Shown here piece after piece: positions 5,321 through 38,088 of a stretch of DNA of 64,000 nucleotides; position 1 is the stretch's first letter, and each line of letters opens with the position of its first letter. The notes under the pieces are model-generated. The model was given only the letters and a program-made list of their open reading frames with translations. It was not told where the DNA came from and made no database searches. Location of the stretch: the IMG/VR virus record IMGVR_UViG_3300042502_001233, positions 1 to 64,000 of that record; one strand, given 5' to 3'. Both the position numbers and the translations under genes were made by a program.

Positions 5321-5393
5321 TTGAGTAAGAGGGTTTCGAACCCTACGCTACCACCCGTCTAGGTGGTCTTCTAACCAATTAAAGTATTACCCA
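5321..5393 (-). tRNA. degenerate tRNA, anticodon uncertain
   Basis: TGGGTAA/TTACTCA acceptor, D and T arms; anticodon loop not 7 nt. Confidence 0.45.
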
Positions 5394-5401
5394 AATTTTT
5401 G

Positions 5402-5474
5402 TGGAGCTGACGGGAGTTGAACCCGCATCCTCTACCGTGCAAGGGTAGCGCTCAGCCAGTTGAGCTACAGCCCC
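5402..5474 (-). tRNA. tRNA-Ala(TGC)
   Basis: cloverleaf, G3:U70, CTACC-CTTGCAC-GGTAG. Confidence 0.95.
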
Positions 5475-5660
5475 TTCCTATGGCGTTGATGCAACTTAAT
5501 AGATTCGTCAATCCATTAGCGGTTACACCAACTAACCATTTCTGTGCGGATATCAGTGGAATCGAACCACAACCTCTTCAGCGTCGAAGAATACTCTCAT
5601 TTAAAACCTATGGTTTACAACACATAAGTTTAACATAAATGATGGTGTGGCCACACCCCA

Positions 5661-6356
5661 TTATACTAATGATACCCATTTTCTTATAGCGTTATCGCTA
5701 ACACCGTATTTACGACCAGTTGCTGAATAACCTAATTCTTCTATTTCTTTTAACAAAACTTCTTTATCAGGTCTTTCAACTTTTCTTTGATTTATTGAAC
5801 TTAGAATTTGTTTATTTGTTTTACCACCATTTTTAGTTCTTTCTAGTATCAATAAATTTTTATTTTCTTTTATCTTATTATGTTTAATTTCATCTATTTT
5901 GTATTTTACAATATTTTTACCACCATGTGTATCTAATGTTGCGTTACAATTTGGACAAACAATTCTAAGATTTTCTAGTCTATTATCATTATGCGTCCCA
6001 TTTTTATGGTCTAATATCAATGACATTTTTTTACCCATCCATTCTTCACCTTGACCGCATAACTCACAACAACGTTGTTTTAACCCTTCATCATATAACT
6101 TGTTTTTTAGACTAGTTGTATGTATGTAGTTAGAATTTTCTATTAAAATTTCATCTAAAGTAAACTTACTTTTTATTTTAACTTTACTAGGTATATAAAA
6201 ATGGTCAATCTGTAAACCATATTCGTTAACATATTTTTTAATAGTGTCTCGGTTACCTTTACCAGTACCAATATTTAATTTTCTACATGCGTCAGTATAA
6301 TTAATACTATTTTTTATAATCTCACTAAAATACTGTTTTTCATATTTATTTTTCAT
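5661..6356 (-). CDS. HNH homing endonuclease
   Basis: CELC...LDHKNG...NLRIVCPNC. Confidence 0.85.
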   Translation of the reverse strand: MKNKYEKQYFSEIIKNSINYTDACRKLNIGTGKGNRDTIKKYVNEYGLQIDHFYIPSKVKIKSKFTLDEILIENSNYIHTTSLKNKLYDEGLKQRCCELCGQGEEWMGKKMSLILDHKNGTHNDNRLENLRIVCPNCNATLDTHGGKNIVKYKIDEIKHNKIKENKNLLILERTKNGGKTNKQILSSINQRKVERPDKEVLLKEIEELGYSATGRKYGVSDNAIRKWVSLV

Positions 6357-6423
6357 AATTTAACTTTTATATAAATATACATCTATATTTAAAAAAGTCA
6401 AGTGTTCGAACTAAATATTTTTG

Positions 6424-6495
6424 TAGCCCGTATGGGGTTCGAACCCATGCCTCCCGATAGAAAGTCGGACGTGTTAACCACTTCACTAACGGGCC
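6424..6495 (-). tRNA. tRNA-Glu(TTC)
   Basis: cloverleaf, TCCGA-CTTTCTA-TCGGG. Confidence 0.9.
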
Positions 6496-6502
6496 ATTTT
6501 TG

Positions 6503-6588
6503 CAGCTACAACGGGAGTCGAACCCGCTACGTGGATAAATCCACACTAGAGTGACAGTCTAGCACACCAACCGTTATGCGCTGTAGCT
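6503..6588 (-). tRNA. tRNA-Asp(GTC) with long variable arm
   Basis: CTAGA-CTGTCAC-TCTAG followed by hairpin GTGGA-TTTA-TCCAC. Confidence 0.85.
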
Positions 6589-6593
6589 ATTTT

Positions 6594-6668
6594 TGGCGGT
6601 CTATGAGGGAATCGAACCCTCATCACAAGCGTGACAAGCTTGCATCCTAGCCGTTGAACGAATAGACC
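6594..6668 (-). tRNA. tRNA-Asp(GTC)
   Basis: cloverleaf with encoded CCA. Confidence 0.93.
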
Positions 6669-6705
6669 ATTTAGATTTTTGATTACTGGAATCTTAACCA
6701 GATTG

Positions 6706-6780
6706 TAGCCCTGACGGGATTCGAACCCGCATTGCGCACCTTGAAAGGGTGGCTTCCTATTCCGTTTAGAAGACGGGGCC
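6706..6780 (-). tRNA. tRNA-Glu(TTC)
   Basis: cloverleaf, CCACC-CTTTCAA-GGTGC. Confidence 0.9.
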
Positions 6781-6786
6781 ATGTTG

Positions 6787-6859
6787 TGGGGACAGAGGGA
6801 GTCGAACCCTCGACACCTGACTCTTCAGGCCAGTGCTCTACCAACTGAGCTACATCCCC
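6787..6859 (-). tRNA. tRNA-Phe(GAA)
   Basis: canonical cloverleaf. Confidence 0.95.
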
Positions 6860-6869
6860 GATTATGTTG

Positions 6870-6940
6870 TGGAACCAACGGGAGTCGACCCCGTGTCTCT
6901 GCGCCTTCAACGCAGTGCTAAACCCCTCAGCTATGGAACC
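6870..6940 (-). tRNA. atypical tRNA-Phe(GAA)
   Basis: CTGCG-TTGAAGG-CGCAG; two U-U mismatches in acceptor; T-loop GTCGACT. Confidence 0.7.
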
Positions 6941-6960
6941 AATTTTTGCTTAATAAAAAA

Positions 6961-7359
6961 CTACATTTTTAAAACTTGATTATAAATTTCATCAATAGTT
7001 AACCCATTTTTATGTAAATTAACAATAAACTCAATATGTTCTTTAGATGTTAACTTAGGTCTCCTATTTTCTAAATTTTCTTTTCTTGTCACAACCCTTA
7101 GATTTATTAATCTATTATCGTCCTTATCTCGGTTAATATGGTCAACTTCTAAACCATCTAATTTATCAGTAATAAAAACTTCAGCTACTAATCTATAAAC
7201 ACTAAACTGATGTCTTTTTTCATCTATTTTTAATTTTATCCTATGATAACCTTTTTTATTTACAAATGGTTTTAAAATTCTATTCGTTAGAATATTTCTA
7301 ATTCTACCTAAATCTGAAATTTCATAAAATGTTTCTCTAAATTTTTTCCAATTTTCCAT
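6961..7359 (-). CDS. NUMOD4-HNH homing endonuclease
   Basis: ENWK..YEISDLGRIR; VDHINRDKDDNRLINL. Confidence 0.85.
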   Translation of the reverse strand: MENWKKFRETFYEISDLGRIRNILTNRILKPFVNKKGYHRIKLKIDEKRHQFSVYRLVAEVFITDKLDGLEVDHINRDKDDNRLINLRVVTRKENLENRRPKLTSKEHIEFIVNLHKNGLTIDEIYNQVLKM

Positions 7360-7373
7360 TTTAATTTTTTAAT

Positions 7374-7405
7374 AAAAAAAGCCTGACATTTTTACTGTCA
7401 GGCTT
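7374..7405 (-). terminator. attenuator terminator of Phe/Glu/Asp/Ala tRNA operon
   Basis: AAGCCTGACA-GTAAAAA-TGTCAGGCTT followed by U tract. Confidence 0.85.
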
Positions 7406-7430
7406 ATCATTTATATCGTTAATTTAAACG

Positions 7431-7520
7431 TTAACTTATGACAGTGTTTGACCTTCCGTAAGAGTAATCCTCCTCGGCTGCGAAAAATGCAAAATCAAAT
7501 ATGTTAGTTAAAGTTCTCAT
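7431..7520 (-). CDS. attenuator leader peptide MRTLTNIFDFAFFAAEEDYSYGRSNTVIS
   Basis: 29-aa ORF between promoter and terminator; 11 consecutive F/D/A/E codons; 3' ACTGTCA complementary to terminator 5' arm. Confidence 0.8.
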   Translation of the reverse strand: MRTLTNIFDFAFFAAEEDYSYGRSNTVIS

Positions 7521-7601
7521 TGTGTTTTCTTTTTGTATTTGTTTATAAATATGCGACTTTTTTTAAAAAGTCATTTTTTTTCTTTGTTTTTAATTATAGT
7601 G

Positions 7602-7633
7602 CAAAGATACGAACTGTTTTAATACATGTCAAG
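7602..7633 (-). promoter_or_regulatory. Bacteroidetes-type housekeeping promoter
   Basis: CTTGAC...TATCTTTG, matches the TAnnTTTG -7 element; same motif recurs upstream of many units. Confidence 0.7.
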
Positions 7634-7747
7634 TTTTTTTGCAACTTTTTTTTGAAATATTTTATATTTCGTTGTTTCTCAATTGATTAAGATAAGGTTT
7701 CATCTCATCTTTTTCTGTGTATTTGAATACTCAGCAAAACATATTTA

Positions 7748-8668
7748 TTATTTGTTGTTTGTTTTTTTAGACCAGTTTGTGTTAGTATCACCTTTTTTAA
7801 ATCCACCTAATGCACCACCTTTATTTATATTTAAAACTTCCCAACCTTCTAACTTTCTATCATCAATTCTTTTATTTTCAATCACACCTATTTGGTTTTC
7901 TGGATAAAATTTATCATCTTCAAACCACTCAAATTCTTCTTTTTTTTCCATTAAATCTCTAACAAACTTATTTGATGATTTGACCATGTGAGATTTTTTT
8001 CTTGTTGTTGGGTCAAAACTTAAACCGATATATATTTTTTTTACGTTATAAAACCTAATTTCATAAATTTTACGTTTACATTTATTACCAACAACCCTAA
8101 AATGTTTACCAACGTCATCTAATAAATTATATCTAACAGCATGACGATACGCTCTACGATATTTTTTTTGAAATTCCCATTTCGTTTCGCATTTTAACGC
8201 TAAATCTTTTACTTCATCATAAGACCAATAATGTTTTACATCCATATGACTAGTAATTTCATCATAAATTTTATGTCTAATAGCATAATCATAGGCGCCA
8301 GGTGCTTCTTTAATAAAATCATTTTTTTTATTATATTTTAAAGCTATTTTTTTCACACTATCGTGACACCATAAATTATTTCCTTTTAATAACGCATAAC
8401 ATTCATCTAAATAACCATGTTTTTTAGCAAATTGAAAAGCACCGCTTTTTCCATGGAAATCTTTTTTATAGTCACAACTTTTAACATATTCTATTAATAA
8501 TTCATATGTCCATTTAAATTTAGCTAAATCTCTGGTAATTTCATGATAAAAACCATGTCTTCTAGCATATTTAACCGCACCACTATATTTACGTTGAAAA
8601 TCATTTTTGGAATCACATTCTAATACCGCTAATCTGACGTTTGTTTCATTCCATCGTCTTTCTTTCAT
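7748..8668 (-). CDS. GIY-YIG-like homing endonuclease with N-terminal repeats
   Basis: 4 repeats W..E.V...A..C..K..F.K; C-terminal KIY..IYIGLS...R...H. Confidence 0.75.
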   Translation of the reverse strand: MKERRWNETNVRLAVLECDSKNDFQRKYSGAVKYARRHGFYHEITRDLAKFKWTYELLIEYVKSCDYKKDFHGKSGAFQFAKKHGYLDECYALLKGNNLWCHDSVKKIALKYNKKNDFIKEAPGAYDYAIRHKIYDEITSHMDVKHYWSYDEVKDLALKCETKWEFQKKYRRAYRHAVRYNLLDDVGKHFRVVGNKCKRKIYEIRFYNVKKIYIGLSFDPTTRKKSHMVKSSNKFVRDLMEKKEEFEWFEDDKFYPENQIGVIENKRIDDRKLEGWEVLNINKGGALGGFKKGDTNTNWSKKTNNK

Positions 8669-8686
8669 AAAAAACATTTTTTTTCG

Positions 8687-8769
8687 TACCGCTGGCGAGA
8701 CTCGAACTCGCACACCCTCACGGGCACCAGATTCTTAGTCTGGCGTGTCTACCATTCCACCACAGCGGC
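8687..8769 (-). tRNA. tRNA-Leu(AAG)
   Basis: CCAGA-CTAAGAA-TCTGG, class II variable arm. Confidence 0.9.
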
Positions 8770-8774
8770 AGGTA

Positions 8775-8863
8775 CAAGATAGTTAATTTTGTGGATTTGA
8801 ACCACTTCGTTCGCATTTTAAGTGTGAATTTTTAACCAGTTTTTGTTTGCTGAAACTATCTTT
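8775..8863 (-). ncRNA. Y-RNA-like/tRNA-mimic RNA (TTCAGCAA-stem family, copy 1)
   Basis: terminal stem AAGATAGTT/AACTATCTT enclosing TCAGCAAAC, an anticodon-like arm and T arm GTGG-TTCAAAT-CCAC. Confidence 0.5.
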
Positions 8864-8866
8864 TAG

Positions 8867-8949
8867 TACGGATAGTCGGACTCGAACCGACACTCATATT
8901 TCAGAACACGGGTCTAAGCCGTGTGTGTCTACCATTCCACCATATCCGC
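8867..8949 (-). tRNA. tRNA-Leu(TAG)
   Basis: CACGG-CTTAGAC-CCGTG. Confidence 0.9.
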
Positions 8950-8958
8950 AAATCTGAA

Positions 8959-9102
8959 TTAGATTTCTTCTAATTCAATATCTTCCAAGTTTTCTTGTTC
9001 TTTATTCTCTTTATTGGCACATGTAATATGCACAAATTTTTTGTCTACTAGTAAAGCAGCTCCGTGGATAATACCACCGCATTCGCAACAACTAAATTTC
9101 AT
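8959..9102 (-). CDS. small putative zinc-binding protein
   Basis: MKFSCCECGG...HITC, acidic tail, 47 aa. Confidence 0.5.
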   Translation of the reverse strand: MKFSCCECGGIIHGAALLVDKKFVHITCANKENKEQENLEDIELEEI

Positions 9103-9132
9103 ACTTCCATAATTTTAAATAACATGTTATTG

Positions 9133-9216
9133 TAGCCAGAGTGGGAATCGAACCCACACGTCCTTGCGGACACAAGATTTTGAGTCTTGCGCGTCTACCT
9201 GTTTCGCCATCTGGCC
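9133..9216 (-). tRNA. tRNA-Leu(CAA)
   Basis: CAAGA-CTCAAAA-TCTTG. Confidence 0.95.
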
Positions 9217-9285
9217 ATGATGTGATTGGCATTTTAACCATTGCATGAATTTAATCAAGTGTGAGTATACGCCTTTCACATTTTG

Positions 9286-9372
9286 TAGCTAGAGTGGGAC
9301 TCGAACCCACATGGACCTTTCGGTCCGCCAGATTTTAAGTCTGGTGCGTATACCTAATTCCGCCATCTAGCC
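9286..9372 (-). tRNA. tRNA-Leu(TAA)
   Basis: CCAGA-CTTAAAA-TCTGG. Confidence 0.95.
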
Positions 9373-9379
9373 ATTATTT

Positions 9380-9904
9380 TTAATTCATCTTCCTAATTGA
9401 ATGATGTCTTAATCTATGACAATTTGAACATAAAACGTCGCATTTATCAATCTCATTTTTTATTGTTTCCCATTTTTGAAATTTTATCTTATTAAAATTA
9501 GGGTCTTTCTCAGACGGGTTTAAGTGATGAAAATCAAAAATACAATAATTATTATCATTTAATTTTATTTTACAATCATTACATTCACCACCTTTATATT
9601 GAACCATTTTAATTTTAACGTTTTTAACTCTTTCCGAATGATAAATATTACTACATTTTTTGCAATAACCGTTATAATCATCTCTATTTGTACGTTTATA
9701 ATATTCGCTTAATGGTTTTAATTTTTGACATTTTGGACATAATTTATCAACAGATGATTTTTTGTTATGTTGATTAAGTTTAGTTTTTAATTCAAATTTT
9801 TTAAGCCAATATTTTACGTTACTTTGAGAACATTTTAATTCATCAGCAATTTCTCTTTGAGATTTACCTAGATTGATAAACTTTATTAATAAATCTTTTT
9901 CCAT
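9380..9904 (-). CDS. HNH endonuclease
   Basis: CPKC, FDFHH...LCSNCHRLRH. Confidence 0.8.
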   Translation of the reverse strand: MEKDLLIKFINLGKSQREIADELKCSQSNVKYWLKKFELKTKLNQHNKKSSVDKLCPKCQKLKPLSEYYKRTNRDDYNGYCKKCSNIYHSERVKNVKIKMVQYKGGECNDCKIKLNDNNYCIFDFHHLNPSEKDPNFNKIKFQKWETIKNEIDKCDVLCSNCHRLRHHSIRKMN

Positions 9905-9967
9905 TTGTGTTTTATATTAAAAATAACTCACTTTTGAAAAAAGTAAATATTAACCAGTGATTTATTG

Positions 9968-10053
9968 TAGGGCTAGCTGGACTCGAACCAGCGTTATACT
10001 TCTCGTCTCCATCTTGTAAGGATGGGATGTTTAACCAACTACACCATAGCCCC
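9968..10053 (-). tRNA. tRNA-Val(TAC) with long variable region
   Basis: CCATC-CTTACAA-GATGG plus 16-nt variable region. Confidence 0.85.
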
Positions 10054-10067
10054 GTTTTTGGTAGGTT

Positions 10068-10367
10068 TTAACCTACCTTGATGAAGTCTTCGTTTTCAAT
10101 GGCTCTTTCAATCCATCTAATCAATTCAGACCCTTTGATTTCAGCATCGAATGTGGTTGTACCCAAGTCCTCAGCCAAAACAAGTGTTGGAATTTTTTCA
10201 ATTTCTCTAGTGTCCATCACATATGATTTTTGAACCGTTTTGATTGGAAATTGATAAGTTCCGTCTAATACTTCAACTTTATAATATAGGTTCCCACCTA
10301 CATAGTGGCTAAATCTAGCCAGATTCTTTGACTTATATAAGTCTTTTTTGATTTCATTTTTTTCCAT
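10068..10367 (-). CDS. hypothetical protein
   Basis: ORF, start reassigned to MEKNEIKK outside tRNA-Cys. Confidence 0.7.
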   Translation of the reverse strand: MEKNEIKKDLYKSKNLARFSHYVGGNLYYKVEVLDGTYQFPIKTVQKSYVMDTREIEKIPTLVLAEDLGTTTFDAEIKGSELIRWIERAIENEDFIKVG

Positions 10368-10388
10368 CGCTTCCTTCTTTATCATTAG

Positions 10389-10459
10389 AGGCGCCGACTG
10401 GATTCGAACCAGTGTACGGGGATTTGCAGTCCCCTGCCTAGCCACTCGGCCACAGCGCC
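10389..10459 (-). tRNA. tRNA-Cys(GCA)
   Basis: canonical, U73. Confidence 0.95.
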
Positions 10460-10471
10460 ATTGTTATCAAT

Positions 10472-10500
10472 AAAAAAACCCATCTGGTTAGGATGGGCTT
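10472..10500 (-). terminator. attenuator terminator of Cys/Val/Leu tRNA operon
   Basis: AAGCCCATC-CTAACCA-GATGGGTTT-TTTT, 12 nt before tRNA-Cys. Confidence 0.85.
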
Positions 10501-10528
10501 TTTGAGAGAGATACTTATCTTATTCAGA

Positions 10529-10612
10529 TTAGTTAACACACAAGAAGCCCAGCTGTGTTTCCACAAGCAAGCATAAGCTTAAAAGGACTAATATGTTAAA
10601 AGTATTTCTCAT
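10529..10612 (-). CDS. attenuator leader peptide MRNTFNILVLLSLCLLVETQLGFLCVN
   Basis: 27-aa ORF rich in L/V/C; TGGGCTT complementary to terminator 5' arm AAGCCCA. Confidence 0.8.
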   Translation of the reverse strand: MRNTFNILVLLSLCLLVETQLGFLCVN

Positions 10613-10653
10613 TTTGTTTTTTTGTTTTCTGTAAGTTAAACTTTGATACAGTG

Positions 10654-10685
10654 CAAATATACTAACTATTTTAATACAAGTCAAG
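10654..10685 (-). promoter_or_regulatory. Bacteroidetes-type promoter
   Basis: CTTGAC...TATATTTG. Confidence 0.7.
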
Positions 10686-10731
10686 TGTTTTGCAATTTTT
10701 TTTATAATAAATATGTAATTTTTTAAAAAAG

Positions 10732-11313: not shown

Positions 11314-11335
11314 CAATATTTTTATTATAAATATC

Positions 11336-11935: not shown

Positions 11936-11991
11936 AGTGTTTTTTACTATAAATATTGACAAAATCTAAAAACTTTCTTATATTTATGATT

Positions 11992-12099
11992 ATGGGATAT
12001 GTATACCTTTTATTACAAATAGATTTTGATGGGAATGAATCCTACAAAATTGGTATTACCAAAAATGACCCAAATAAACGTGTAAAACAACTGCAAACT
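11992..12099 (+). pseudogene. orphaned 5' end of GIY-YIG/T5orf172-like gene
   Basis: MGYVYLLLQIDFDGNESYKIGITKNDPNKRVKQLQT, homologous to the start of 12948..13271. Confidence 0.85.
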
Positions 12100-12136
12100 T
12101 TTTCACAAATCGATATATTTATAATAAATTAAACAC

Positions 12137-12946: not shown

Positions 12947-12947
12947 A

Positions 12948-13763: not shown

Positions 13764-13769
13764 ATTATA

Positions 13770-18299: not shown

Positions 18300-18509
18300 T
18301 TACCAACTATCGTAGTCGGTTATATCTTTTTTAACTTCAAACAATCCTTTTTCTTTGCTTTTTATAATAACTTCAATGTTATCACCAATACCAGTTGGTG
18401 TAAAGCAAAACGTTCTTGTGTAATATGTCTCATGACCGTATAATGTTTTAACAGCGTCTTCAACTTCTTTTAAGTTTTGTTTTTCTTTTTCGTTTAAACT
18501 AAAATCCAT
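18300..18509 (-). CDS. hypothetical protein
   Basis: MDFSLNEKE...DITDYDSW. Confidence 0.6.
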   Translation of the reverse strand: MDFSLNEKEKQNLKEVEDAVKTLYGHETYYTRTFCFTPTGIGDNIEVIIKSKEKGLFEVKKDITDYDSW

Positions 18510-19798
18510 TAGTGTTCCATTTGTATTAAATGAGAAATTGTACATTGTACTGGATTGTAAATGATAAACTCATCATTTCTCAAGTCAGCACCACCGTGAG
18601 CGTATACGCTATCAAAACCATCCTTTTGGATGTTAGAGTAACTCAAACTATAGCATGATGAATCATGTTTATGAATGTGTTTCTCGTTCCCTAAATGTAC
18701 ATCGAACAATGCCAAGAAACCTATTTGAGAATTCCCTCTAGTCCAATGAGAACCTGATAGAGAACTATACCCTAGCGATTTTTGGCTCTTGTTTGCAAAA
18801 TATACACCATCACCGAACATTGAACCAGTATACACCGCGCCAGAAGGTCTAATCATAAGACCAGTCTGAATAATGTTAAACCAGTTCTCGTTACGCGAAC
18901 CATGCCAGTAAAGTCTTTTCTTTTTAACTTTGGCAGTTTTAAAGTGAGCATCAAACTTAGCTTGTGTAGCCAAGTTAACCACTTTGAAAATCTTTTTAGC
19001 TTTGTTGGCGTTATCACCCAATAATTTGGTGATAAGGTTAAGAGTTTCACTGTCTTTTTCAACTTCAACTTTAAGACCCATTTGAGTAAGAATGTCAATG
19101 TCTGACATTTCTTCACCAGTGGTTTCAACAGTTTGTTTTTGTTGTTTGATAAGTTTAACCTGACCAGACATCGTATCTAACGCGCTTTGTTCTTCACCCA
19201 ACAACCTTTGTGCTTTTTCTAATTCAACATCGTCACCCAACCCTTGAACCAAATGGTTTTTAACGTTGTCCATCTTTCTTGGGATGATTGTGTAAAGCTT
19301 CAACAACTCGTTGTTAACGTCTTTAAGGTCACCACCAACTTTCAACATAGCAGTTACTCTTGATAACACTTCTTGAGCCGATTCCACTTGTTGTTCAGAA
19401 ACTGCATCTTGTGTTACTTTGTAGTTTTTCTGGATAGACTTATTCGCGTATGCCATAAGGTCTTGGACCAATTTCTTAACCATTGCGTCTTTGATTGCTT
19501 CAACGGTATTGTTTTTTGATGCACCGTTTGAATCATCAACAACTGGTTCAGCTAACAATTCAGTTACGTCAGTGTAACCTTTGGTTGATGACGTTTTTTC
19601 GCGTAAGATTTTATCCCACTCGTTTTTACTTTTAAACACAGTAGCCATGTTTTTACCCACTCTACCATACTCACATTTTATTCTACCATCTGAAAGTTCT
19701 TCCATGATGTAGACTTTGTTGCTATTGTCTGTTTTACCATTGTCTACCGACACGTGAATCAGTTTAGCATATCTTAACCCGTTTTCTTTTGTAACCAT
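18509..19798 (-). CDS. PARP-like ADP-ribosyltransferase (WGR + regulatory + catalytic)
   Basis: YGRVG; LYTIIP; YWHGSR, GSMFGDGVYFA, KSLGY, NDEFIIY (H-Y-E triad). Confidence 0.9.
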   Translation of the reverse strand: MVTKENGLRYAKLIHVSVDNGKTDNSNKVYIMEELSDGRIKCEYGRVGKNMATVFKSKNEWDKILREKTSSTKGYTDVTELLAEPVVDDSNGASKNNTVEAIKDAMVKKLVQDLMAYANKSIQKNYKVTQDAVSEQQVESAQEVLSRVTAMLKVGGDLKDVNNELLKLYTIIPRKMDNVKNHLVQGLGDDVELEKAQRLLGEEQSALDTMSGQVKLIKQQKQTVETTGEEMSDIDILTQMGLKVEVEKDSETLNLITKLLGDNANKAKKIFKVVNLATQAKFDAHFKTAKVKKKRLYWHGSRNENWFNIIQTGLMIRPSGAVYTGSMFGDGVYFANKSQKSLGYSSLSGSHWTRGNSQIGFLALFDVHLGNEKHIHKHDSSCYSLSYSNIQKDGFDSVYAHGGADLRNDEFIIYNPVQCTISHLIQMEH

Positions 19799-28243: not shown

Positions 28244-28262
28244 TTTAAATATTAAAGTTTAA

Positions 28263-30734: not shown

Positions 30735-30735
30735 G

Positions 30736-31257: not shown

Positions 31258-31313
31258 AACTATTTTTTACAAAGATACGATATGTTTTTAATATATGCAA
31301 ATAAAAAGGGGTC

Positions 31314-32252: not shown

Positions 32253-32276
32253 TGTGCAAATGTATATATTAGTTTT

Positions 32277-33038: not shown

Positions 33039-33066
33039 TTTTGTTGTTATAAACAAATATACTAAA

Positions 33067-33999
33067 TTAAGTTTGATTTATCAAGTGAATAATTGAAGGG
33101 TTGTAAACTATTATGTGTTTTATATTTTCATAGTCTTTATTTACTATGATTCCGTCAATACCTAAAGAAACACAATTTCTAACAAATTCAACTGGGTTAT
33201 ATCTGTAAAAATCAATCCATACTTGAAGAATGCAGTCTTTTTCGTTATCATTGAAGTTCATACAACCTTCAACAAATTCTTGCATACCTCTTATTGGATT
33301 TTCGTCCCAATTTTGTGCACTACCTTCCCAATCTTCAGCCATCATAGCTAATTTTTTGATATAAGGTCTTAATTTATTTTTGTTTATTGGAACTTGGTCA
33401 AATAAAACTCTTGGTGTTAGTTTTACACTATAGATATTTTCACCATAACGACCAGCTTCTTCTTTTGATGTGGTGAAGTAAATACCTGGACCTTCTAGGT
33501 CATTGGCTTCTTTACCACCAACAAAATCATCCATAAATTTAGTTATTTTGGTTGGGCTACCGTGAAATACGTAGTATTCACCACCATCGATTGATTCTGG
33601 TAATAAATTTTCCCTAAGCAAAGTCTTAATCAAAAACTTATTCTCGTTTAACGAATTTAACATAAAATTACAGTTTGGAAATAAAATAATTTCATTGGTT
33701 TCACCATCTTTCATTGTGATAATCGCATCATAACCCAAACCCATTAATTTTTTTGTTAATTGTTTACCCTTGGCTTTATATTCTTTAGCCAATTCGTATT
33801 TGTAAGAAATTTGGGTGTCATCGTCAACCTCTATTGTAAGTGGATTTTTTATTACAGCCAAACCAGAAACCCATGGTTCTTTAACTGGTCTATCAGTATC
33901 TTTTTCAATCACATATGTACCAGATGGTTCAACATCTTGACCGAACATAGAACCGTAGTATTGTGCTGGTTCCATGTTTTTCATTATCCTTAATATCAT
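33067..33999 (-). CDS. ADP-ribosyltransferase-like (ART-PolyVal-type) protein
   Basis: FHGS, GPGIYFT..A..Y, GIDGII; second degenerate N-terminal copy (GYDAII). Confidence 0.6.
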   Translation of the reverse strand: MILRIMKNMEPAQYYGSMFGQDVEPSGTYVIEKDTDRPVKEPWVSGLAVIKNPLTIEVDDDTQISYKYELAKEYKAKGKQLTKKLMGLGYDAIITMKDGETNEIILFPNCNFMLNSLNENKFLIKTLLRENLLPESIDGGEYYVFHGSPTKITKFMDDFVGGKEANDLEGPGIYFTTSKEEAGRYGENIYSVKLTPRVLFDQVPINKNKLRPYIKKLAMMAEDWEGSAQNWDENPIRGMQEFVEGCMNFNDNEKDCILQVWIDFYRYNPVEFVRNCVSLGIDGIIVNKDYENIKHIIVYNPSIIHLINQT

Positions 34000-34039
34000 A
34001 TTTTCTTTTTATATAAATATCATGATTCAAGGGAAAATC

Positions 34040-34127
34040 TGGAGGAGAATATGGGATTCGAACCCATGGGCCGAACTAACGGCCACGGTTTAGCAAACCG
34101 CTCCAATAACCACTCTGGCAATTCTCC
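34040..34127 (-). tRNA. tRNA-Ser(GCT)
   Basis: class II cloverleaf with CCA. Confidence 0.93.
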
Positions 34128-34134
34128 AAATTTG

Positions 34135-34170
34135 TACCCCTACAGGGACTCGAACCCCGATTCTAGCCTT
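34135..34170 (-). pseudogene. orphan 3' half of a tRNA
   Basis: GGCTAG-AAT-CGGGG-TTCGAGT-CCCTG-TAGGGGT-A directly after the HNH stop codon; no 5' half. Confidence 0.7.
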
Positions 34171-34771
34171 AATTTTTGTAATTTTTTAAATATCGGTCTT
34201 TTCTAGCTGAGTTTTTATTTTTAGATTTATATGTATCTAATTGTGAATCACAATTATGACATATTAACCTTAAATTATTTCTCATATTATTAGACGCATT
34301 TCCGTTAATATGGTCTAAAATAAAATTCATAGGTTTACCATTCCAAACATTTTTAATATTACATATATCACATTCACAATTTTGTTCTATTAATATATGT
34401 TTTTTCAATGGTGCTAAATCTTTATTAGCGTTACAAAAATCTTCTTGATTACTCAAATAATTTTTATAGTATTCTTCAGTTTTATGTTTTACCCAACATT
34501 CTTTATTACAATATAATTGTTTATCATAAGAAGTGTTAACTTCTTTACCACAACACAAACAATTTATTTTCTTACCCTTACCAGTGTTAACTGGTTTGAA
34601 ATTTTCACCAAATTTTGCTCTGATTGGTAATTCAATTCCTAATCGTTTACATACTTTTTTTATATATGTATCAGAAACACCGTATTTTTCACCAATTTTT
34701 CTATAAGAAATTTTTTGAACAAAAATTAAATCTTCTAGGTCTACTTTTTTATATTTTTCATTATAATCCAT
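34169..34771 (-). CDS. HNH homing endonuclease
   Basis: LDHINGN...NLRLICHNC. Confidence 0.85.
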   Translation of the reverse strand: MDYNEKYKKVDLEDLIFVQKISYRKIGEKYGVSDTYIKKVCKRLGIELPIRAKFGENFKPVNTGKGKKINCLCCGKEVNTSYDKQLYCNKECWVKHKTEEYYKNYLSNQEDFCNANKDLAPLKKHILIEQNCECDICNIKNVWNGKPMNFILDHINGNASNNMRNNLRLICHNCDSQLDTYKSKNKNSARKDRYLKNYKN

Positions 34772-34849
34772 AATATTTTTTTATTATAAATATAATGAAT
34801 TCGAACCAAAAGTCAACTATTTTTAAATTTAATTTTATGTTCAGATTTG

Positions 34850-34922
34850 TGACCTTATCGGGATTCGAACCCAAACGACAAATTTAGAAGATTTGTATGC
34901 TAATCCGTTACATCATAAGGCC
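34850..34922 (-). tRNA. tRNA-Arg(TCT)
   Basis: CAAAT-CTTCTAA-ATTTG. Confidence 0.88.
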
Positions 34923-34940
34923 AGTTATTATTTAATGTTG

Positions 34941-35014
34941 TGGCTCCGACAGGGCTCGAACCTGTGACCCACAGATTAGAAATCTGTTGCTCTGTCCATC
35001 TGAGCTACGGAGCC
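34941..35014 (-). tRNA. tRNA-Arg(TCT)
   Basis: ACAGA-TTTCTAA-TCTGT. Confidence 0.93.
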
Positions 35015-35021
35015 AATTTTT

Positions 35022-35098
35022 TGGTGACCACGGTAGGATTCGAACCTACAACCTCCGCAGTCGTAATGCGGTGCGCTATCCAGTTGCGCCACGTGGCC
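35022..35098 (-). tRNA. tRNA-Arg(ACG)
   Basis: CCGCA-TTACGAC-TGCGG, CCA. Confidence 0.93.
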
Positions 35099-35104
35099 AG
35101 TATT

Positions 35105-35177
35105 TGGTACCGAGTATGGGAGTCGAACCCATGTATTCATCTTTATGAGGGATGAACGTTTTCCTATAACCCTCGGC
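35105..35177 (-). tRNA. atypical tRNA with CAT anticodon (Met/Ile2)
   Basis: short D arm, extended anticodon stem TTCATC/GATGAA, CCA. Confidence 0.65.
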
Positions 35178-35183
35178 ATTTTG

Positions 35184-35257
35184 CGGCCTCGACAGGATTC
35201 GAACCTGTAACCCTTGAGTTAACAACTCACCGCTCTAACCATTATAGCTACGAGGCC
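35184..35257 (-). tRNA. tRNA-Asn(GTT)
   Basis: cloverleaf, G73. Confidence 0.9.
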
Positions 35258-35264
35258 TTTTTTT

Positions 35265-35340
35265 TGGCGGCCTAGGTAGGATTCGAACCTACACGCCTCA
35301 CCTTAACAGGGTGCCGCTCTACCGTTGGAGCTACTAGGCC
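35265..35340 (-). tRNA. tRNA-Asn(GTT)
   Basis: cloverleaf, CCA. Confidence 0.92.
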
Positions 35341-35446
35341 AATTTTATATTTTTATCAATACACCGAGTACCACAATTACGGTGCGCCTCTGGCCTACTC
35401 GCCAGCAATGCTGTTTTTACCCGTGGTTACACCATTTGATAGGGTG

Positions 35447-35520
35447 TGGTCCCCTCGGGACTCGAACCCGAAACCGTCGCGTTATGAGCGCGCTGCGCTA
35501 ACCAATTGCGCCAGAGGACC
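35447..35520 (-). tRNA. tRNA-CAT (Ile2 or elongator Met)
   Basis: GCGCG-CTCATAA-CGCGA. Confidence 0.88.
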
Positions 35521-35763
35521 TTATTTACGTTTTTCAACAAGATAGTTAATGTAATCTTCGTAGCCATCATCATCATCATCATCATCATCATAATCATCAT
35601 CTTCTGGTTCAAAGTCTTCATCTAACATTTTATCCAGAACTTCAAAAGCTATTTTCATTACTTCGTTTTCTTTACCCTTTAATTGTGGGTTAGGAAGCAA
35701 AATGAACAATCCAACTATGGCTTCTACCAATCCTTTTTCATTTTCACTATATTGTCTTTTCAT
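35521..35763 (-). CDS. acidic hypothetical protein
   Basis: poly-Asp encoded by GAT repeat. Confidence 0.6.
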   Translation of the reverse strand: MKRQYSENEKGLVEAIVGLFILLPNPQLKGKENEVMKIAFEVLDKMLDEDFEPEDDDYDDDDDDDDGYEDYINYLVEKRK

Positions 35764-35765
35764 AG

Positions 35766-35849
35766 TTGTGACGGTGGGGCTCGAACCCACATTGTGTTAT
35801 AAACACCCAGCGTATCAGGCTGGTGACTAAACCATTCATCCACATCACA
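35766..35849 (-). tRNA. tRNA-Ile(GAT) with long variable arm
   Basis: CCAGC-CTGATAC-GCTGG + GTGTT-TAT-AACAC hairpin. Confidence 0.8.
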
Positions 35850-35856
35850 GTTTTCG

Positions 35857-35930
35857 TGGGTAACACGGGAGTCGAACCCATAACCTCTCGCGTATCAGGC
35901 GAGTGCTCTAACCAGTTGAGCTAGCTACCC
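35857..35930 (-). tRNA. tRNA-Ile(GAT)
   Basis: canonical. Confidence 0.93.
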
Positions 35931-35938
35931 ATTATTTG

Positions 35939-36011
35939 CACGGACCAAGAGAATCGAACTCTTTCCATTCGAGGTTTTGGAGACCTGATGCATGCCATTA
36001 TGCTGGCCCGT
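35939..36011 (-). tRNA. tRNA-Trp(CCA), slightly atypical
   Basis: AGGT-CTCCAAA-ACCT, G73. Confidence 0.8.
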
Positions 36012-36019
36012 ATTTAATT

Positions 36020-36113
36020 TATCACCAAAGGATTCGAACCTTTACACCCTTCTCGGGTTACCGTTTTCACTACAGCAGTCAGTACCCAGTTTACTCTTTT
36101 GACTCACGTGATA
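36020..36113 (-). tRNA. degenerate tRNA-Ser(TGA)-like
   Basis: acceptor, long variable arm, T arm; enlarged D loop, G33. Confidence 0.45.
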
Positions 36114-36120
36114 AATTTAG

Positions 36121-36207
36121 GGTGAAAAGACGGGACTCGAACCCGCAAGGACATTTCTGTCATCTGGCTCACAACCAGACTCGCTACCGTTACGTACTAC
36201 AATCACC
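36121..36207 (-). tRNA. tRNA-His(GTG) with long variable arm
   Basis: TCTGG-TTGTGAG-CCAGA + GACA-GAAA-TGTC; imperfect acceptor. Confidence 0.75.
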
Positions 36208-36216
36208 ATGTATTTC

Positions 36217-36849
36217 TTATACTCGACCTAATCTCCAATTATCTGGAATTAAATCATCTTTTTTAATCTTTTTATTTTCACTACCATTTGTTACCCATCG
36301 ACTACCAAATTGTGAATTTGTTTCACCAACACCAGTACCTTTTTTTACTTTAGACATTAATTGTTTAGATTCATGACTATGGGTTTCACCTTCCCAATTT
36401 TTAATCCAATTTTTATCTCTAGTACCAGTTAAATATTCTAGTGTTCTAGCTGTTGATATTTTATTACTTTTCTTTTCTACCCATTCTGGGTCTTGTCTTA
36501 AAAGCTTTTGTTTTTCGTTTGATTTAATCGCATTCAATTTTTGTTGTTCCGAGCTAAACCCACCAGTACCACCTTCTCTAAGATTCATACACATAGGGTT
36601 TTCCACCAACTCTTTAGTAACAATTTCAATCTCTCTAAGAACCATTTCTTCTCTTGTAGGTAAAAATTCAAGTATTTCTTTTGTATGGTTTTCCACACCA
36701 TGTTTTCTAATTGAATACCTAAGTCTTTTACCACTCCCCATATAACCATCTTCCAGGTTATATGCACTATGCATTCCTACATAATATCTTCCCGTTACAT
36801 TACATGTTGTTTTATATATGTAATGTATGTTTCTTTGTTTTCTTGCCAT
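36217..36849 (-). CDS. GIY-YIG (Seg-like) homing endonuclease
   Basis: YIYKTT..YYVGMH..DGYMGSG; paralog of 57153..57812. Confidence 0.88.
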   Translation of the reverse strand: MARKQRNIHYIYKTTCNVTGRYYVGMHSAYNLEDGYMGSGKRLRYSIRKHGVENHTKEILEFLPTREEMVLREIEIVTKELVENPMCMNLREGGTGGFSSEQQKLNAIKSNEKQKLLRQDPEWVEKKSNKISTARTLEYLTGTRDKNWIKNWEGETHSHESKQLMSKVKKGTGVGETNSQFGSRWVTNGSENKKIKKDDLIPDNWRLGRV

Positions 36850-36908
36850 TTCTCTTTCTTTCTAAATAAATATCTTAAGAAAGAGAAAAGTACAAAAAAG
36901 TTTAAGAG

Positions 36909-36983
36909 GGTGGTATATCGGGTTCGAACCGATGACCCTCGACACCACAAGCCGATGCTCTAACCAACTGAGCTAATACCACC
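36909..36983 (-). tRNA. tRNA-His(GTG)
   Basis: canonical, G-1:C73. Confidence 0.93.
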
Positions 36984-37076
36984 ATGTTTAATTTACATTC
37001 ACCGCATTTTTGCGGCGATTATCACCGTTAACTTTAAAAATTATAAACTATGCGGTGATAATATTGTCTATTCGCC

Positions 37077-37511
37077 TTATTTTTGCGGTGAATATTTTTC
37101 TATATAATTTATTAAATTATTCAAATAATTAATATCTTCTTTTACATTACCCAACAATTTATTACATTTGTCACATAAAATATCTCTAACAACACCAGTT
37201 AAATGACAATGGTCCACATGTGTGTTTTTATCATTTTTTAGAACATCACTACAGATAGAACATTTATTATCTTGTTTATCTAATTTTAAAAAATATTCTT
37301 CTTTTGTAAGACCATAATTTCTTAAAATTGAATTATATTTTATTTTTTCTTTCTGAATAGGGTTTTGATATCTAATCTTAGTCCTATTATTTTCACACTC
37401 TTTACAATAATGATTTAAACCATCTTTATTATAATTCTTAATACCAAATAAATCAATACTTTTTACTTCTTGACATTTGGAACATCTTTTTACGTTCGTA
37501 TTTATTTCCAT
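37077..37511 (-). CDS. endonuclease VII-like HNH protein
   Basis: YGLT...QDNKCSIC..VDHCH..G.VR.ILC..CN. Confidence 0.85.
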   Translation of the reverse strand: MEINTNVKRCSKCQEVKSIDLFGIKNYNKDGLNHYCKECENNRTKIRYQNPIQKEKIKYNSILRNYGLTKEEYFLKLDKQDNKCSICSDVLKNDKNTHVDHCHLTGVVRDILCDKCNKLLGNVKEDINYLNNLINYIEKYSPQK

Positions 37512-37580
37512 ACTAATAAATATCTAACATTTTGTAAAAGTGCGGATAATTTTTAATATTCACCGCATTTGTAAACTTTG

Positions 37581-37668
37581 CGGAGATAGTAGGATTCGAA
37601 CCCACAAGCCGTTTCCGACCACAGTTTTCAAGACCGCCAAGCTTAGTCCACACTGCTCTTATTCTTCC
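37581..37668 (-). tRNA. tRNA-Ser(TGA)
   Basis: GCGGT-CTTGAAA-ACTGT, long variable arm, G73. Confidence 0.8.
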
Positions 37669-37850
37669 AATTCATCGTCCTTTTTAATCTCTACAAAGAT
37701 TACGGTGAACCCACCTTCTTTATGAAATCTTAGCTCTCCGTGATATCCACTGGCATCAGCTATCTTTCTGTACTTATCGACTATCAGGTCGAAATCTTTT
37801 GTAAGGTTTACAGTTTTCTCTGTTCCTAATTTTCTCACCAACTCACCCAT
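37659..37850 (-). CDS. hypothetical protein
   Basis: 63-aa ORF, first cistron after attenuator. Confidence 0.6.
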   Translation of the reverse strand: MGELVRKLGTEKTVNLTKDFDLIVDKYRKIADASGYHGELRFHKEGGFTVIFVEIKKDDELEE

Positions 37851-37861
37851 AGTCTTAAAAT

Positions 37862-37896
37862 AAAAAAACCCGATTAAGTTTTCACTCATCGGGTTG
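37862..37896 (-). terminator. attenuator terminator of Ser/His/Trp/Ile/Met/Asn/Arg tRNA operon
   Basis: AACCCGAT-GAG...CTTA-ATCGGGTT + U tract. Confidence 0.85.
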
Positions 37897-37921
37897 TATA
37901 TTGTTATCTTTTGAATTCTTA

Positions 37922-38020
37922 CTAGAACTCTATGATGTCACAATTAGACATACCCGACACTTGGTGACTATTGCGTCTCCAATTCGAAATCGAAATCATA
38001 TGTATGTTAATTGTTCTCAT
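37922..38020 (-). CDS. attenuator leader peptide MRTINIHMISISNWRRNSHQVSGMSNCDIIEF
   Basis: 16 consecutive I/N/H/M/S/W/R codons; GTCGGGT complementary to terminator arm ACCCGAT. Confidence 0.8.
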   Translation of the reverse strand: MRTINIHMISISNWRRNSHQVSGMSNCDIIEF

Positions 38021-38056
38021 TTTGTTTTATTTTTAATGTTGTTTTTAAATTCTTTG

Positions 38057-38088
38057 CAAATATACGAACTTATTTAATACAAGTCAAG
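38057..38088 (-). promoter_or_regulatory. Bacteroidetes-type promoter
   Basis: CTTGAC...TATATTTG. Confidence 0.7.

What the first reader, a model, noticed from the sequence alone, without database searches (positions are those of the whole stretch)
5321..38088. Phage tRNA operons controlled by codon-matched leader-peptide attenuators (three instances)
Seen: three tRNA clusters share one 5' layout: host-type promoter, a 27-32 aa leader starting ATGAGAA (MR...), a segment late in the leader complementary to the 5' arm of a strong intrinsic terminator, the terminator, then the tRNAs. Each leader's control stretch is made of codons for the amino acids of its own operon's tRNAs: FDFAFFAAEED for Phe/Glu/Asp/Ala; LVLLSLCLLV for Cys/Val/Leu; INIHMISISNWRRNSH for Ser/His/Trp/Ile/Met/Asn/Arg. 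Established: trp/his/leu/ilv-type attenuation works by ribosome stalling on such codons, but it controls amino-acid biosynthesis or synthetase genes. Inference: the phage senses depletion or cleavage of specific host tRNAs (starvation or anticodon-nuclease defence) and switches on the matching set of replacement tRNAs. I know of no description of this for phage tRNA arrays.
Basis: partly seen in the sequence, partly recalled or inferred. Interest (0 to 1): 0.97.

Follow-up and report, generated by a model that had tools for sequence, protein, structure and literature searches.

The report
Codon-matched leader attenuators of phage tRNA operons
A 362-kb lake-water phage puts a short, probably translated "test" ORF and a terminator in front of each tRNA operon, and the ORF is written in exactly the codons that operon's tRNAs read, so the phage most likely makes replacement tRNAs only when those codons become slow to decode, a use of attenuation I found described nowhere.

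Summary
All three modules are at the stated places: promoter, a 27-32 aa leader ORF, an intrinsic terminator, then a tRNA operon.

- **A fourth module lies outside the window** at genome position 357,990-357,730. Its leader is rich in T, Y, Q, P, K and G, and it sits before the Pro/Gln/Lys/Gly/Tyr/Thr tRNAs.
- **The four operons split all 20 amino acids.** Every anticodon species has a matching codon in its own leader.
- **The design is conserved.** About 30 related metagenomic phages carry it. Two distant 635-642 kb uncultured phages carry it with different amino-acid groupings, and their leaders change to match (Gln-only, Glu+Tyr, Arg+Ser, Pro+Asp). One such leader, rich in N and R, precedes an AsnRS gene and an ArgRS-like gene.
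- **The alternative pairing co-varies.** Terminator stems differ between relatives, and a leader segment at about codons 21-25 changes with them so that it stays complementary to the terminator's 5' arm.

Best explanation: classical ribosome-mediated attenuation applied to tRNA genes, forming a negative-feedback loop on tRNA supply. No experiment has been done, and the trigger (codon demand, tRNA loss or host defence) is open. The weak points are the module-1 antiterminator and gene-by-gene tracking among close relatives. I found no prior description. Verdict: a new variant of a known kind, of high interest.

The parts
7602..7646 (-). Module 1 promoter: GTTGCAAAAAAAC, then TTGACA-17-TATCTT, which also reads as TTG-N20-TAnnTTTG
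   Evidence: The same 40-nt promoter block occurs before all four leaders.
7431..7520 (-). Module 1 leader ORF, 29 aa. Control codons 8-18 encode FDFAFFAAEED.
   Evidence: All four anticodon species of the operon are represented.
7372..7405 (-). Module 1 intrinsic terminator: 10-bp stem, 7-nt loop, T-run
   Evidence: The proposed antiterminator partner at 7433-7443 is weak (P = 0.58).
5320..6940 (-). tRNA operon 1: Phe, Phe, Glu, Asp, Asp, Glu, an HNH ORF at 5661-6356, Ala, and one unclassified tRNA
6961..7359 (-). NUMOD4/HNH homing-type endonuclease gene inserted between the module 1 terminator and the first tRNA
10654..10696 (-). Module 2 promoter
10529..10612 (-). Module 2 leader ORF, 27 aa. 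Control codons encode LVLLSLCLLV.
10542..10551 (-). Module 2 antiterminator segment UGGGCUUCUU (codons 21-24). It is complementary to the terminator 5' arm and is held in the leader hairpin when no ribosome is stalled.
   Evidence: P = 0.02
10472..10503 (-). Module 2 intrinsic terminator: 12-bp stem and T-run, ending 10 nt before tRNA-Cys
8686..10459 (-). tRNA operon 2: Cys, Val, Leu(UAA), Leu(CAA), Leu(UAG), Leu(AAG)
38057..38099 (-). Module 3 promoter
37922..38020 (-). Module 3 leader ORF, 32 aa. Control codons encode INIHMISISNWRRNSH. The stop codon is TAG, followed directly by TAA.
38002..38013 (-). Module 3 segment 1, the 5' strand of leader helix P1 (CAAUUAACAUAC, codons 3-7)
37941..37958 (-). 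Module 3 segment 2. GUCGGGU pairs with the terminator 5' arm as the antiterminator. The overlapping GUAUGUCUAAUUG pairs with segment 1.
   Evidence: P = 0.003
37860..37895 (-). Module 3 intrinsic terminator: arms AACCCGAU and AUCGGGUU, extended into the loop, plus a T-run
34040..36982 (-). tRNA operon 3: His, His, Trp, Ile, Ile, Met/Ile2(CAU), Asn, Asn, Arg(ACG), Arg(UCU) twice, an ORF, Ser(GCU)
37580..37660 (-). Decayed tRNA-Ser(UGA) copy. It is intact and the first tRNA of the operon in relatives. It is the cognate of the TCG control codons.

Best explanation
These are ribosome-mediated (leader-peptide) transcription attenuators placed in front of phage tRNA operons.

Proposed sequence of events:
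1. A host-type promoter starts a transcript that first encodes a 27-33 aa leader.
2. Codons about 5-19 of the leader are the codons read by the tRNAs of the operon behind it, down to individual isoacceptors. For example AGA then CGY matches tRNA-Arg UCU and ACG, and TCG plus AGY matches tRNA-Ser UGA and GCU.
3. When those codons are decoded quickly, the ribosome runs on. The leader hairpin re-forms, segment 1 at codons 3-10 with segment 2 at codons 20-27, or the ribosome itself covers segment 2. The terminator then forms about 25 nt past the stop codon and transcription ends.
4. When any of those aminoacyl-tRNAs is scarce, the ribosome stalls on the control codons and holds segment 1 open. Segment 2 pairs with the terminator's 5' arm, and RNA polymerase reads through into the tRNA genes.
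5. The product is the molecule being sensed, so each operon is under negative feedback: tRNA supply on demand.

Shown here: the architecture, its conservation, the codon-anticodon matching, the co-variation of leader content with operon content, and the co-variation of segment 2 with the terminator.

Inferred: that the leader is translated, the direction of the switch, and the physiological trigger.
For: - Four modules in the genome share one layout, and their operons partition all 20 amino acids.
- The run matrix is strictly diagonal and extreme against 2,166 genomic small ORFs.
- Every anticodon species has a codon in its own leader.
- In 29 of 29 distinct relatives the Arg pair is AGA followed by CGY or CGA.
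- 29 operon-3-type, 4 operon-2-type, 3 operon-1-type and 3 operon-4-type modules were found in related contigs. The stop codon always lies 21-34 nt before the terminator stem.
- LR745206 and LR756502 carry the design with other groupings and matching leaders. The true assignment is the best of 5,040 permutations.
- A leader rich in N and R precedes an AsnRS gene (asnS equivalog, 394 bits) and an ArgRS-like gene.
- Cognate leader-terminator complementarity beats shuffled assignments across 17 terminator families (P = 2e-5; 0 of 100,000 on duplex energy). Across 12 modules it beats shuffled leaders (Fisher P = 4e-8).
- Leader transcripts are unusually structured, with z-scores of -3.1 to -5.6.
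- The same leader hairpin is predicted independently in 25 relatives, and 70% of cells are paired against 32-42% in slid controls.
- Ribosome-mask folding gives the expected switch.
- In this genome the combination of promoter, small ORF and terminator is essentially confined to the tRNA operons.
- A lake metatranscriptome contig covers the leader at depth 18.5 against 2-4 over the operon body. This is weak evidence.
Against: - There is no experimental evidence of translation, stalling or read-through.
- The module 1 antiterminator is no better than chance.
- For modules 1, 3 and 4, equilibrium folding also allows the antiterminator with no ribosome or with the ribosome at the stop codon. The off state therefore depends on folding kinetics that I could not model.
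- Among close relatives the leader is more conserved than the operon. Extra Pro, Thr, Asp or Leu tRNAs are not reflected in the leader, and reduced operons keep Ile, Trp and Ser codons.
- Promoter-like sites inside operons, and one between terminator and tRNA-Phe in L017, could bypass the attenuator.
- The RNA depth comes from assembler contigs and may pool related strains or DNA.
Confidence: 0.82

Rival explanations
1. The small ORF is translated, but the terminator is a fixed, leaky attenuator or a transcript-end or processing signal. The codon bias would then serve something other than switching the terminator, for example checking newly made tRNAs or setting leader mRNA stability.
For: Equilibrium folds do not give a clean off state for modules 1, 3 and 4. 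The module 1 antiterminator is not significant. Internal promoter-like sites exist.
Against: Segment 2 co-varies with very different terminator stems. The constant spacing of control codons, segment 2, stop codon and terminator has no purpose without a switch. The same design precedes aaRS genes with matching codons.
Confidence: 0.08
2. The leader is not translated. The codon-like triplets would bind tRNA anticodons directly, as in a T-box-like RNA sensor.
For: The triplets are complementary to the operon's anticodons by definition, and no Shine-Dalgarno sequence precedes the ATG.
Against: No T-box or other riboswitch match appears even at relaxed thresholds. The triplets form an ATG-to-stop frame whose length and stop position are conserved. 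The A-rich, Shine-Dalgarno-free start context is the rule for all genes of this phage. Third-base drift stays within one tRNA's decoding range, CGT, CGC and CGA. Eleven to seventeen different specifiers in a row fit no known tRNA-binding RNA.
Confidence: 0.04
3. The ORFs encode small functional peptides, such as membrane peptides, or the match is a compositional accident of an AT-rich genome.
For: The module 2 leader looks hydrophobic. Small ORFs are common in AT-rich DNA.
Against: The empirical null and the diagonal matrix argue against accident, as do the permutation tests in two genomes and the isoacceptor-level matching. Four quite different peptide chemistries each fit their own operon.
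Confidence: 0.02

Closest known systems
Leader-peptide attenuators of enterobacterial amino-acid operons (trpL, hisL, leuL, thrL, ilvL, pheL; Rfam RF00513 and relatives)
   Same: Both have a promoter-proximal short ORF with clustered regulatory codons, a leader hairpin, an antiterminator that excludes an intrinsic terminator, and a stop codon shortly before the terminator. Multi-amino-acid leaders are already known for thr and ilv (my own knowledge).
   Different: Here the controlled genes are tRNAs, so the sensed molecule is the product. The leaders carry 3-7 amino acids with isoacceptor-specific codons. The context is a phage with Bacteroidota-type promoter and start signals. There is no sequence homology: the best Rfam hit is Trp_leader at 23.3 bits against a cutoff of 41, and nothing significant matches modules 1 and 2.
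pheST (pheM leader) attenuation of phenylalanyl-tRNA synthetase in E. coli (my own knowledge)
   Same: A translation-supply gene is controlled by a leader rich in the cognate codons. This directly parallels the N/R-rich leader before the AsnRS and ArgRS-like genes in LR745206.
   Different: That is a cellular, single-amino-acid case. It is not known for tRNA genes.
T-box riboswitches
   Same: They sense tRNA status and choose between a terminator and an antiterminator upstream of aaRS and amino-acid genes.
   Different: A T-box binds one uncharged tRNA directly and needs no translation. No T-box motifs or Rfam hits occur here.
tRNA gene clusters of phages T5 and T4, and the counter-defence view of phage tRNAs (PMC10264068)
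   Same: Both are dense tRNA arrays interspersed with homing endonuclease genes and small ORFs. Phage tRNAs are thought to replace depleted or cleaved host tRNAs.
   Different: In T5 the promoters sit directly before the tRNAs, and the small ORFs are not codon-matched and have no leader-terminator layout. Seven literature searches found no regulatory leader described for phage tRNAs.

Membership tests
Ribosome-mediated (leader-peptide) transcription attenuator | Short ORF between promoter and terminator, with conserved start and stop | tested here: met
   Leaders of 27-33 aa. The stop codon lies 21-34 nt before the terminator stem in 39 distinct modules. The start context matches that of the phage's other genes.
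Ribosome-mediated (leader-peptide) transcription attenuator | Clustered regulatory codons cognate to the controlled genes | tested here: met
   Runs of 11, 10, 16 and 17 residues from the operon's own amino-acid set. All anticodon species are represented. Permutation tests give 1 of 24 and 1 of 5,040.
Ribosome-mediated (leader-peptide) transcription attenuator | Intrinsic terminator between the leader and the structural genes | tested here: met
   Hairpins of 8-12 bp followed by T-runs. In modules 2 and 4 the first tRNA starts 10-25 nt later.
Ribosome-mediated (leader-peptide) transcription attenuator | Antiterminator pairing that excludes the terminator | tested here: met
   Modules 2-4 give P = 0.02, 0.003 and 0.003, and 12 modules give Fisher P = 4e-8. 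The pairing co-varies across 17 terminator families. Module 1 alone is not significant.
Ribosome-mediated (leader-peptide) transcription attenuator | Leader hairpin (1:2) that overlaps the control codons and sequesters the antiterminator strand | tested here: met
   The same hairpin is predicted independently in 25 relatives. 69.8% of cells are paired against 32-42% in slid controls, and one helix pair shows AU to GC changes. Covariation support is modest.
Ribosome-mediated (leader-peptide) transcription attenuator | Read-through that depends on ribosome stalling at the control codons | not testable with these tools
   Only in-silico ribosome masking was possible, plus a weak metatranscriptome depth difference.
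Rfam amino-acid operon leader families (Trp_leader RF00513, Thr_leader, Phe_leader and others) | Covariance-model score at or above the gathering threshold | tested here: not met
   Trp_leader 23.3 bits against 41, E = 0.18. Thr_leader and Phe_leader 21.3 bits against 55.
T-box riboswitch | Stem I with specifier loop and the conserved T-box antiterminator sequence | tested here: not met
   No T-box match at the gathering threshold over the window, nor at E up to 1-5 over the leader regions.

The most novel reading that the evidence does not exclude
The leaders are isoacceptor-resolved decoding-speed sensors. With them a huge phage detects which host tRNAs have been lost, whether to anticodon nucleases or other tRNA-targeting defences, to phage-induced decay of host tRNAs, or to the shift to the phage's AT-rich codon demand. 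It then switches on only the matching replacement operon, and in relatives the matching aminoacyl-tRNA synthetase. This would be a closed-loop translation-supply and counter-defence circuit encoded by a virus.
Probability: 0.3. Interest if true: 0.95.

Novelty: new variant of a known kind. Interest (0 to 1): 0.88.

Why it matters
**tRNA regulation.** tRNA genes are normally treated as growth-rate-regulated or constitutive. I know of no case, and found none in the searchable literature, where tRNA genes are controlled by translation of a leader written in their own codons.

**Why phages carry tRNAs.** If the mechanism holds, it bears on this 50-year-old question. The phage itself would be reporting which codons it expects to become limiting, and that it supplies tRNAs on demand.

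**Practical uses.**
- The leaders give a compact natural sensor for the availability of individual aminoacyl-tRNAs.
- They give a direct handle on the arms race between tRNA-cleaving defences and phage tRNA arrays.
- They are a diagnostic feature for annotating huge-phage genomes: the leader predicts the content of the operon behind it.

**Breadth.** The system is widespread. It occurs in dozens of lake, marine and wastewater contigs and in two 0.64-Mb phages, and it also controls synthetase genes. It is a general regulatory strategy of this phage group rather than an oddity of one genome.

Tried and rejected
- **Promoter pattern in IMG/VR.** Only unrelated hits and one similar promoter before an ordinary gene.
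- **Flanking proteins as anchors.** The 321-aa and 167-aa proteins next to modules 1 and 4 found no relatives. The CCA-adding enzyme and a 493-aa protein worked.
- **RNAalifold on the MAFFT alignment.** It recovered only the base of the terminator, because arms of different sequence and length are misaligned. I replaced it with register-free complementarity tests.
- **Rank-based swap test.** It was confounded by cross-pairing between similar stems (CCCGA and CCUGA). I replaced it with a family-level permutation test.
- **Stop-codon recoding.** A CUA-anticodon tRNA suggested it, but the standard code already gives about 95% coding density.
- **Phage T5 as a precedent.** Its small ORFs in the tRNA region are not codon-matched.
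- **Rfam.** No leader, T-box or riboswitch family reaches threshold.
- **Cultured relatives.** None were found. The best GenBank hits are uncultured, at 36% identity or less in the CCA-adding enzyme.
- **Fine-scale tracking of single tRNA gains and losses among operon-3 relatives.** No clear signal. ARAGORN and Rfam also miss some odd tRNAs there.
- **Literature.** Seven full-text searches found nothing on leader-controlled phage tRNA genes.

Full report
**Setting.** The window is the first 64 kb of a 362,018-bp IMG/VR phage record. It has about 31% G+C, nearly all genes lie on the minus strand, and it fits the standard genetic code. Lake-water metagenomes hold it almost completely. Its genes lack Shine-Dalgarno sequences: 2% have one, against 6% for the same test inside genes. 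Start codons sit in an A-rich context, with A at position -3 in 69% of genes. The motif TTG-N18-21-TAnnTTTG occurs 121 times on the coding strand against about 20 in shuffles. These are Bacteroidota-type expression signals (my own knowledge), so the host is probably a freshwater member of that phylum. The region also encodes a CCA-adding enzyme, a tmRNA and several homing-type nucleases.

**Checking the observation.** ARAGORN and Rfam place all tRNA genes on the minus strand in clusters.
- A roughly 40-nt promoter block is shared by all modules. It matches sigma-70 hexamers at 10 of 12 positions and also the Bacteroidota -33/-7 pattern.
- An A-rich untranslated stretch follows, then an ATG-initiated ORF of 29, 27 or 32 codons.
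- The stop codon lies 25-26 nt before a G+C-rich hairpin followed by a T-run.
- The control stretches read FDFAFFAAEED, LVLLSLCLLV and INIHMISISNWRRNSH, as reported.

In modules 1 and 3 nuclease genes, and in module 3 also a decayed tRNA-Ser copy, lie between the terminator and the first tRNA. Only in module 2 does the first tRNA follow directly.

**An out-of-sample prediction.** The whole genome holds a fourth tRNA cluster at 357,705-354,351, encoding Pro, Gln, Lys, Gly, Tyr and Thr, which are exactly the amino acids missing from the first three. Upstream lie the same promoter block, a 33-codon leader whose codons 2-18 encode only T, Y, Q, P, K and G, a terminator, and then tRNA-Pro about 25 nt later. 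The four leader-controlled operons therefore partition all 20 amino acids.

**Is it more than chance?**
- Against all 2,166 small ATG-ORFs of the genome, each leader is the top or near-top scorer for the longest run of residues from its own operon's amino-acid set. The runs are 11, 10 (one mismatch), 16 and 17.
- The 4x4 matrix of leaders against operon sets is strictly diagonal, with off-diagonal runs of 3 or less.
- At codon level, every anticodon species of each operon has a cognate codon in its own leader. Both Gly codons, both Arg codons, both Ser codon families and ATT plus ATA for Ile are all present.
- The only unmatched control codon, TCG, corresponds to a tRNA-Ser(UGA) that has decayed in this genome. 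In relatives it is intact and is the first gene of the operon.
- In this genome the combination of promoter motif, small ORF and terminator is almost confined to the tRNA operons, out of 86 terminator-like sites.

**Relatives.**
- Using the neighbouring CCA-adding enzyme as an anchor, IMG/VR and JGI metagenome scans returned about 90 loci at 48-78% identity.
- A simple pipeline found 29 distinct operon-3-type modules, plus operon-1, operon-2 and operon-4 homologues.
- The control stretch is strongly conserved at the nucleotide level.
- The Arg pair is AGA followed by CGT, CGC or CGA in 29 of 29 leaders. These are the codons of the two Arg isoacceptors UCU and ACG, and third-base drift stays within what an inosine-bearing ACG tRNA reads.

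**The alternative RNA structure.**
- Full leader transcripts fold into a long leader hairpin plus the terminator, with energies 3-5.6 standard deviations below shuffles.
- The hairpin pairs codons about 3-10 (including a conserved UUAACAUA) with codons about 20-27. It encloses the control codons. The same fold is predicted independently for 25 relatives.
- On the alignment 69.8% of cells are paired against 32-42% when partners are slid, and one helix position switches between A-U and G-C. That support is moderate, and the structure was derived from one of the aligned sequences.
- When the terminator's 3' arm is left out, mimicking the moment before it is transcribed, the 5' arm pairs with leader codons about 21.7-24.3 in modules 2, 3 and 4. 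This holds with a ribosome masked onto control codons 5-17 and disappears with the ribosome at codons 19-29.
- Ten further modules behave alike. In two 16-codon leaders the antiterminator overlaps the stop codon, the textbook arrangement.
- The key evidence is co-variation. Terminator stems differ widely among relatives (CCCGAU, CCCGACU, CCUGAC, CCUUGA, CUUCUGA and others). The leader segment just before a conserved AUG changes with them (GUCGGG, AGUCGGG, GCAGG, GUCAAGG and so on).
- Across 17 terminator families, the cognate leader-terminator pairing beats shuffled assignments: P = 2e-5 for ungapped complementarity and 0 of 100,000 for duplex energy.
- Against shuffled leaders, modules 2, 3 and 4 are individually significant and 12 modules together give Fisher P = 4e-8. 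Module 1 is not significant (P = 0.58).

**Does leader content track operon content?**
- Among close relatives the tracking is coarse. The four classes always match, but single extra tRNAs (Pro, Thr, Asp, Leu) are not mirrored, and shrunken operons keep Ile, Trp and Ser codons.
- The decisive test came from distant genomes. The nearest GenBank phages are uncultured 635-kb and 642-kb genomes, at 36% and 32% identity in the CCA-adding enzyme.
- Both carry the same promoter-leader-terminator-tRNA design, but group the amino acids differently, and the leaders differ to match:
  - a Q-run leader before three or four tRNA-Gln genes;
  - Y/E-rich leaders before Glu+Tyr operons;
  - S/R-rich leaders before Arg+Ser operons;
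  - P/D-rich leaders before Pro+Asp operons;
  - I/G/A-rich leaders before Ile+Gly+Ala operons;
  - H/K/F/W-rich leaders before His+Phe+Trp+Lys operons;
  - N/L/T/V/I/M-rich leaders before the corresponding large operon.
- In LR745206 the true assignment of seven leaders to seven gene sets scores best of all 5,040 permutations. In this genome it is best of 24.
- One LR745206 leader, whose control codons are Asn and Arg, is followed by a terminator and then by protein genes rather than tRNAs: an asparagine-tRNA ligase (asnS equivalog above its cutoff) and a weakly ArgRS-like ORF. The same device therefore also works as a conventional amino-acid-specific attenuator of synthetase genes, which independently supports the functional reading.

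**Mechanism and its status.** The most likely mechanism is classical attenuation. Stalling on the control codons keeps the 5' strand of the leader hairpin occupied, which frees the 3' strand to pair with the terminator's 5' arm, and transcription continues into the tRNAs. Smooth translation allows the leader hairpin and the terminator to form. Because the operon's products relieve the stall, this is a feedback loop on tRNA supply. It makes biological sense for tRNA depletion or codon-demand shifts. It makes less sense for amino-acid starvation, where extra tRNA would not help (my inference).

Shown: anatomy, statistics, conservation and co-variation. Inferred: translation of the leader, the direction of the switch, the kinetics and the trigger. 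Equilibrium folding does not by itself give a clean off state for modules 1, 3 and 4.

The only expression data are assembler contigs of a lake metatranscriptome. There a piece covering the leader (37938-38023) has depth 18.5, against 2-4 for pieces over the operon body. This is compatible with attenuation but weak, because the depth may pool related strains or DNA.

**Comparison with known systems.**
- It works like the trp, his, leu, thr, ilv and pheST leader-peptide attenuators, and it meets every sequence-level defining feature I could test.
- It is not a homologue of any Rfam leader family. The best hit is Trp_leader at 23.3 bits against a cutoff of 41.
- It is not a T-box.
- Phage T5, the classic phage tRNA cluster with small ORFs, lacks the arrangement.
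- Seven full-text searches found no description of leader-peptide control of phage tRNA genes or of any tRNA genes. The library misses many subscription-journal papers, so absence of prior work is probable but not proven.

**Verdict.** It is a new variant of a known mechanism class, with a new kind of target, and is widespread in a clade of huge aquatic phages.

Noticed in passing
window 58850-59227 (-), with tRNA-Met genes at 57870-57943 and 57057-57145: The phage encodes a tmRNA (Rfam 63 bits) directly upstream of two tRNA-Met genes. Relatives have a Met-Met cluster behind a similar promoter block.
   Followed up: no
window 44350-44423 (-): A tRNA with a CUA anticodon (amber suppressor, labelled Pyl by ARAGORN) is conserved in several relatives, yet the genome reads well with the standard code. 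The module 3 leader ends in TAG followed immediately by TAA.
   Followed up: partly
window 6961-7359, 5661-6356 and 37077-37511 (-): Homing-type nuclease genes (NUMOD4+HNH, HNH, endonuclease VII) sit inside the tRNA operons. In modules 1 and 3 they separate the attenuator from the first tRNA. Promoter-like sites precede some of them (6401-6374, 34816-34789).
   Followed up: partly
window 37580-37660 (-): A decayed tRNA-Ser(UGA) copy with acceptor-stem mismatches, not found by ARAGORN or by Rfam at E up to 1, overlaps the end of a conserved 76-aa ORF. The gene is intact in relatives.
   Followed up: partly
window 5320-5393 and 1252-1329 (-): Two unusual tRNAs: one that ARAGORN calls with a four-base anticodon (agac), and a tRNA-Pro with an AGG anticodon. 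A further tRNA-like hit lies at 35108-35177 (26.6 bits).
   Followed up: no
L111 223-2599 (LR745206.1 about 390,522-392,898): A huge uncultured phage encodes an asparagine-tRNA ligase and an ArgRS-like ORF behind an N/R-rich leader and a terminator of the same design.
   Followed up: yes
L017 6150-6228: In a 137-kb relative, a second TTG...TAnnTTTG promoter-like site lies between the operon-1 terminator and tRNA-Phe. It could give attenuator-independent expression.
   Followed up: no
window 39608-40801, 18509-19798 and 45306-49202 (-): Three protein genes of note: a CCA-adding enzyme 1.6 kb upstream of module 3, a PARP-domain protein, and a 1,298-aa SNF2-helicase/methyltransferase fusion.
   Followed up: no
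window 37860-37987 (-): A sub-threshold, full-length match of the module 3 leader and terminator to Rfam Trp_leader (23.3 bits, E = 0.18). This is a resemblance of architecture, not membership.
   Followed up: yes
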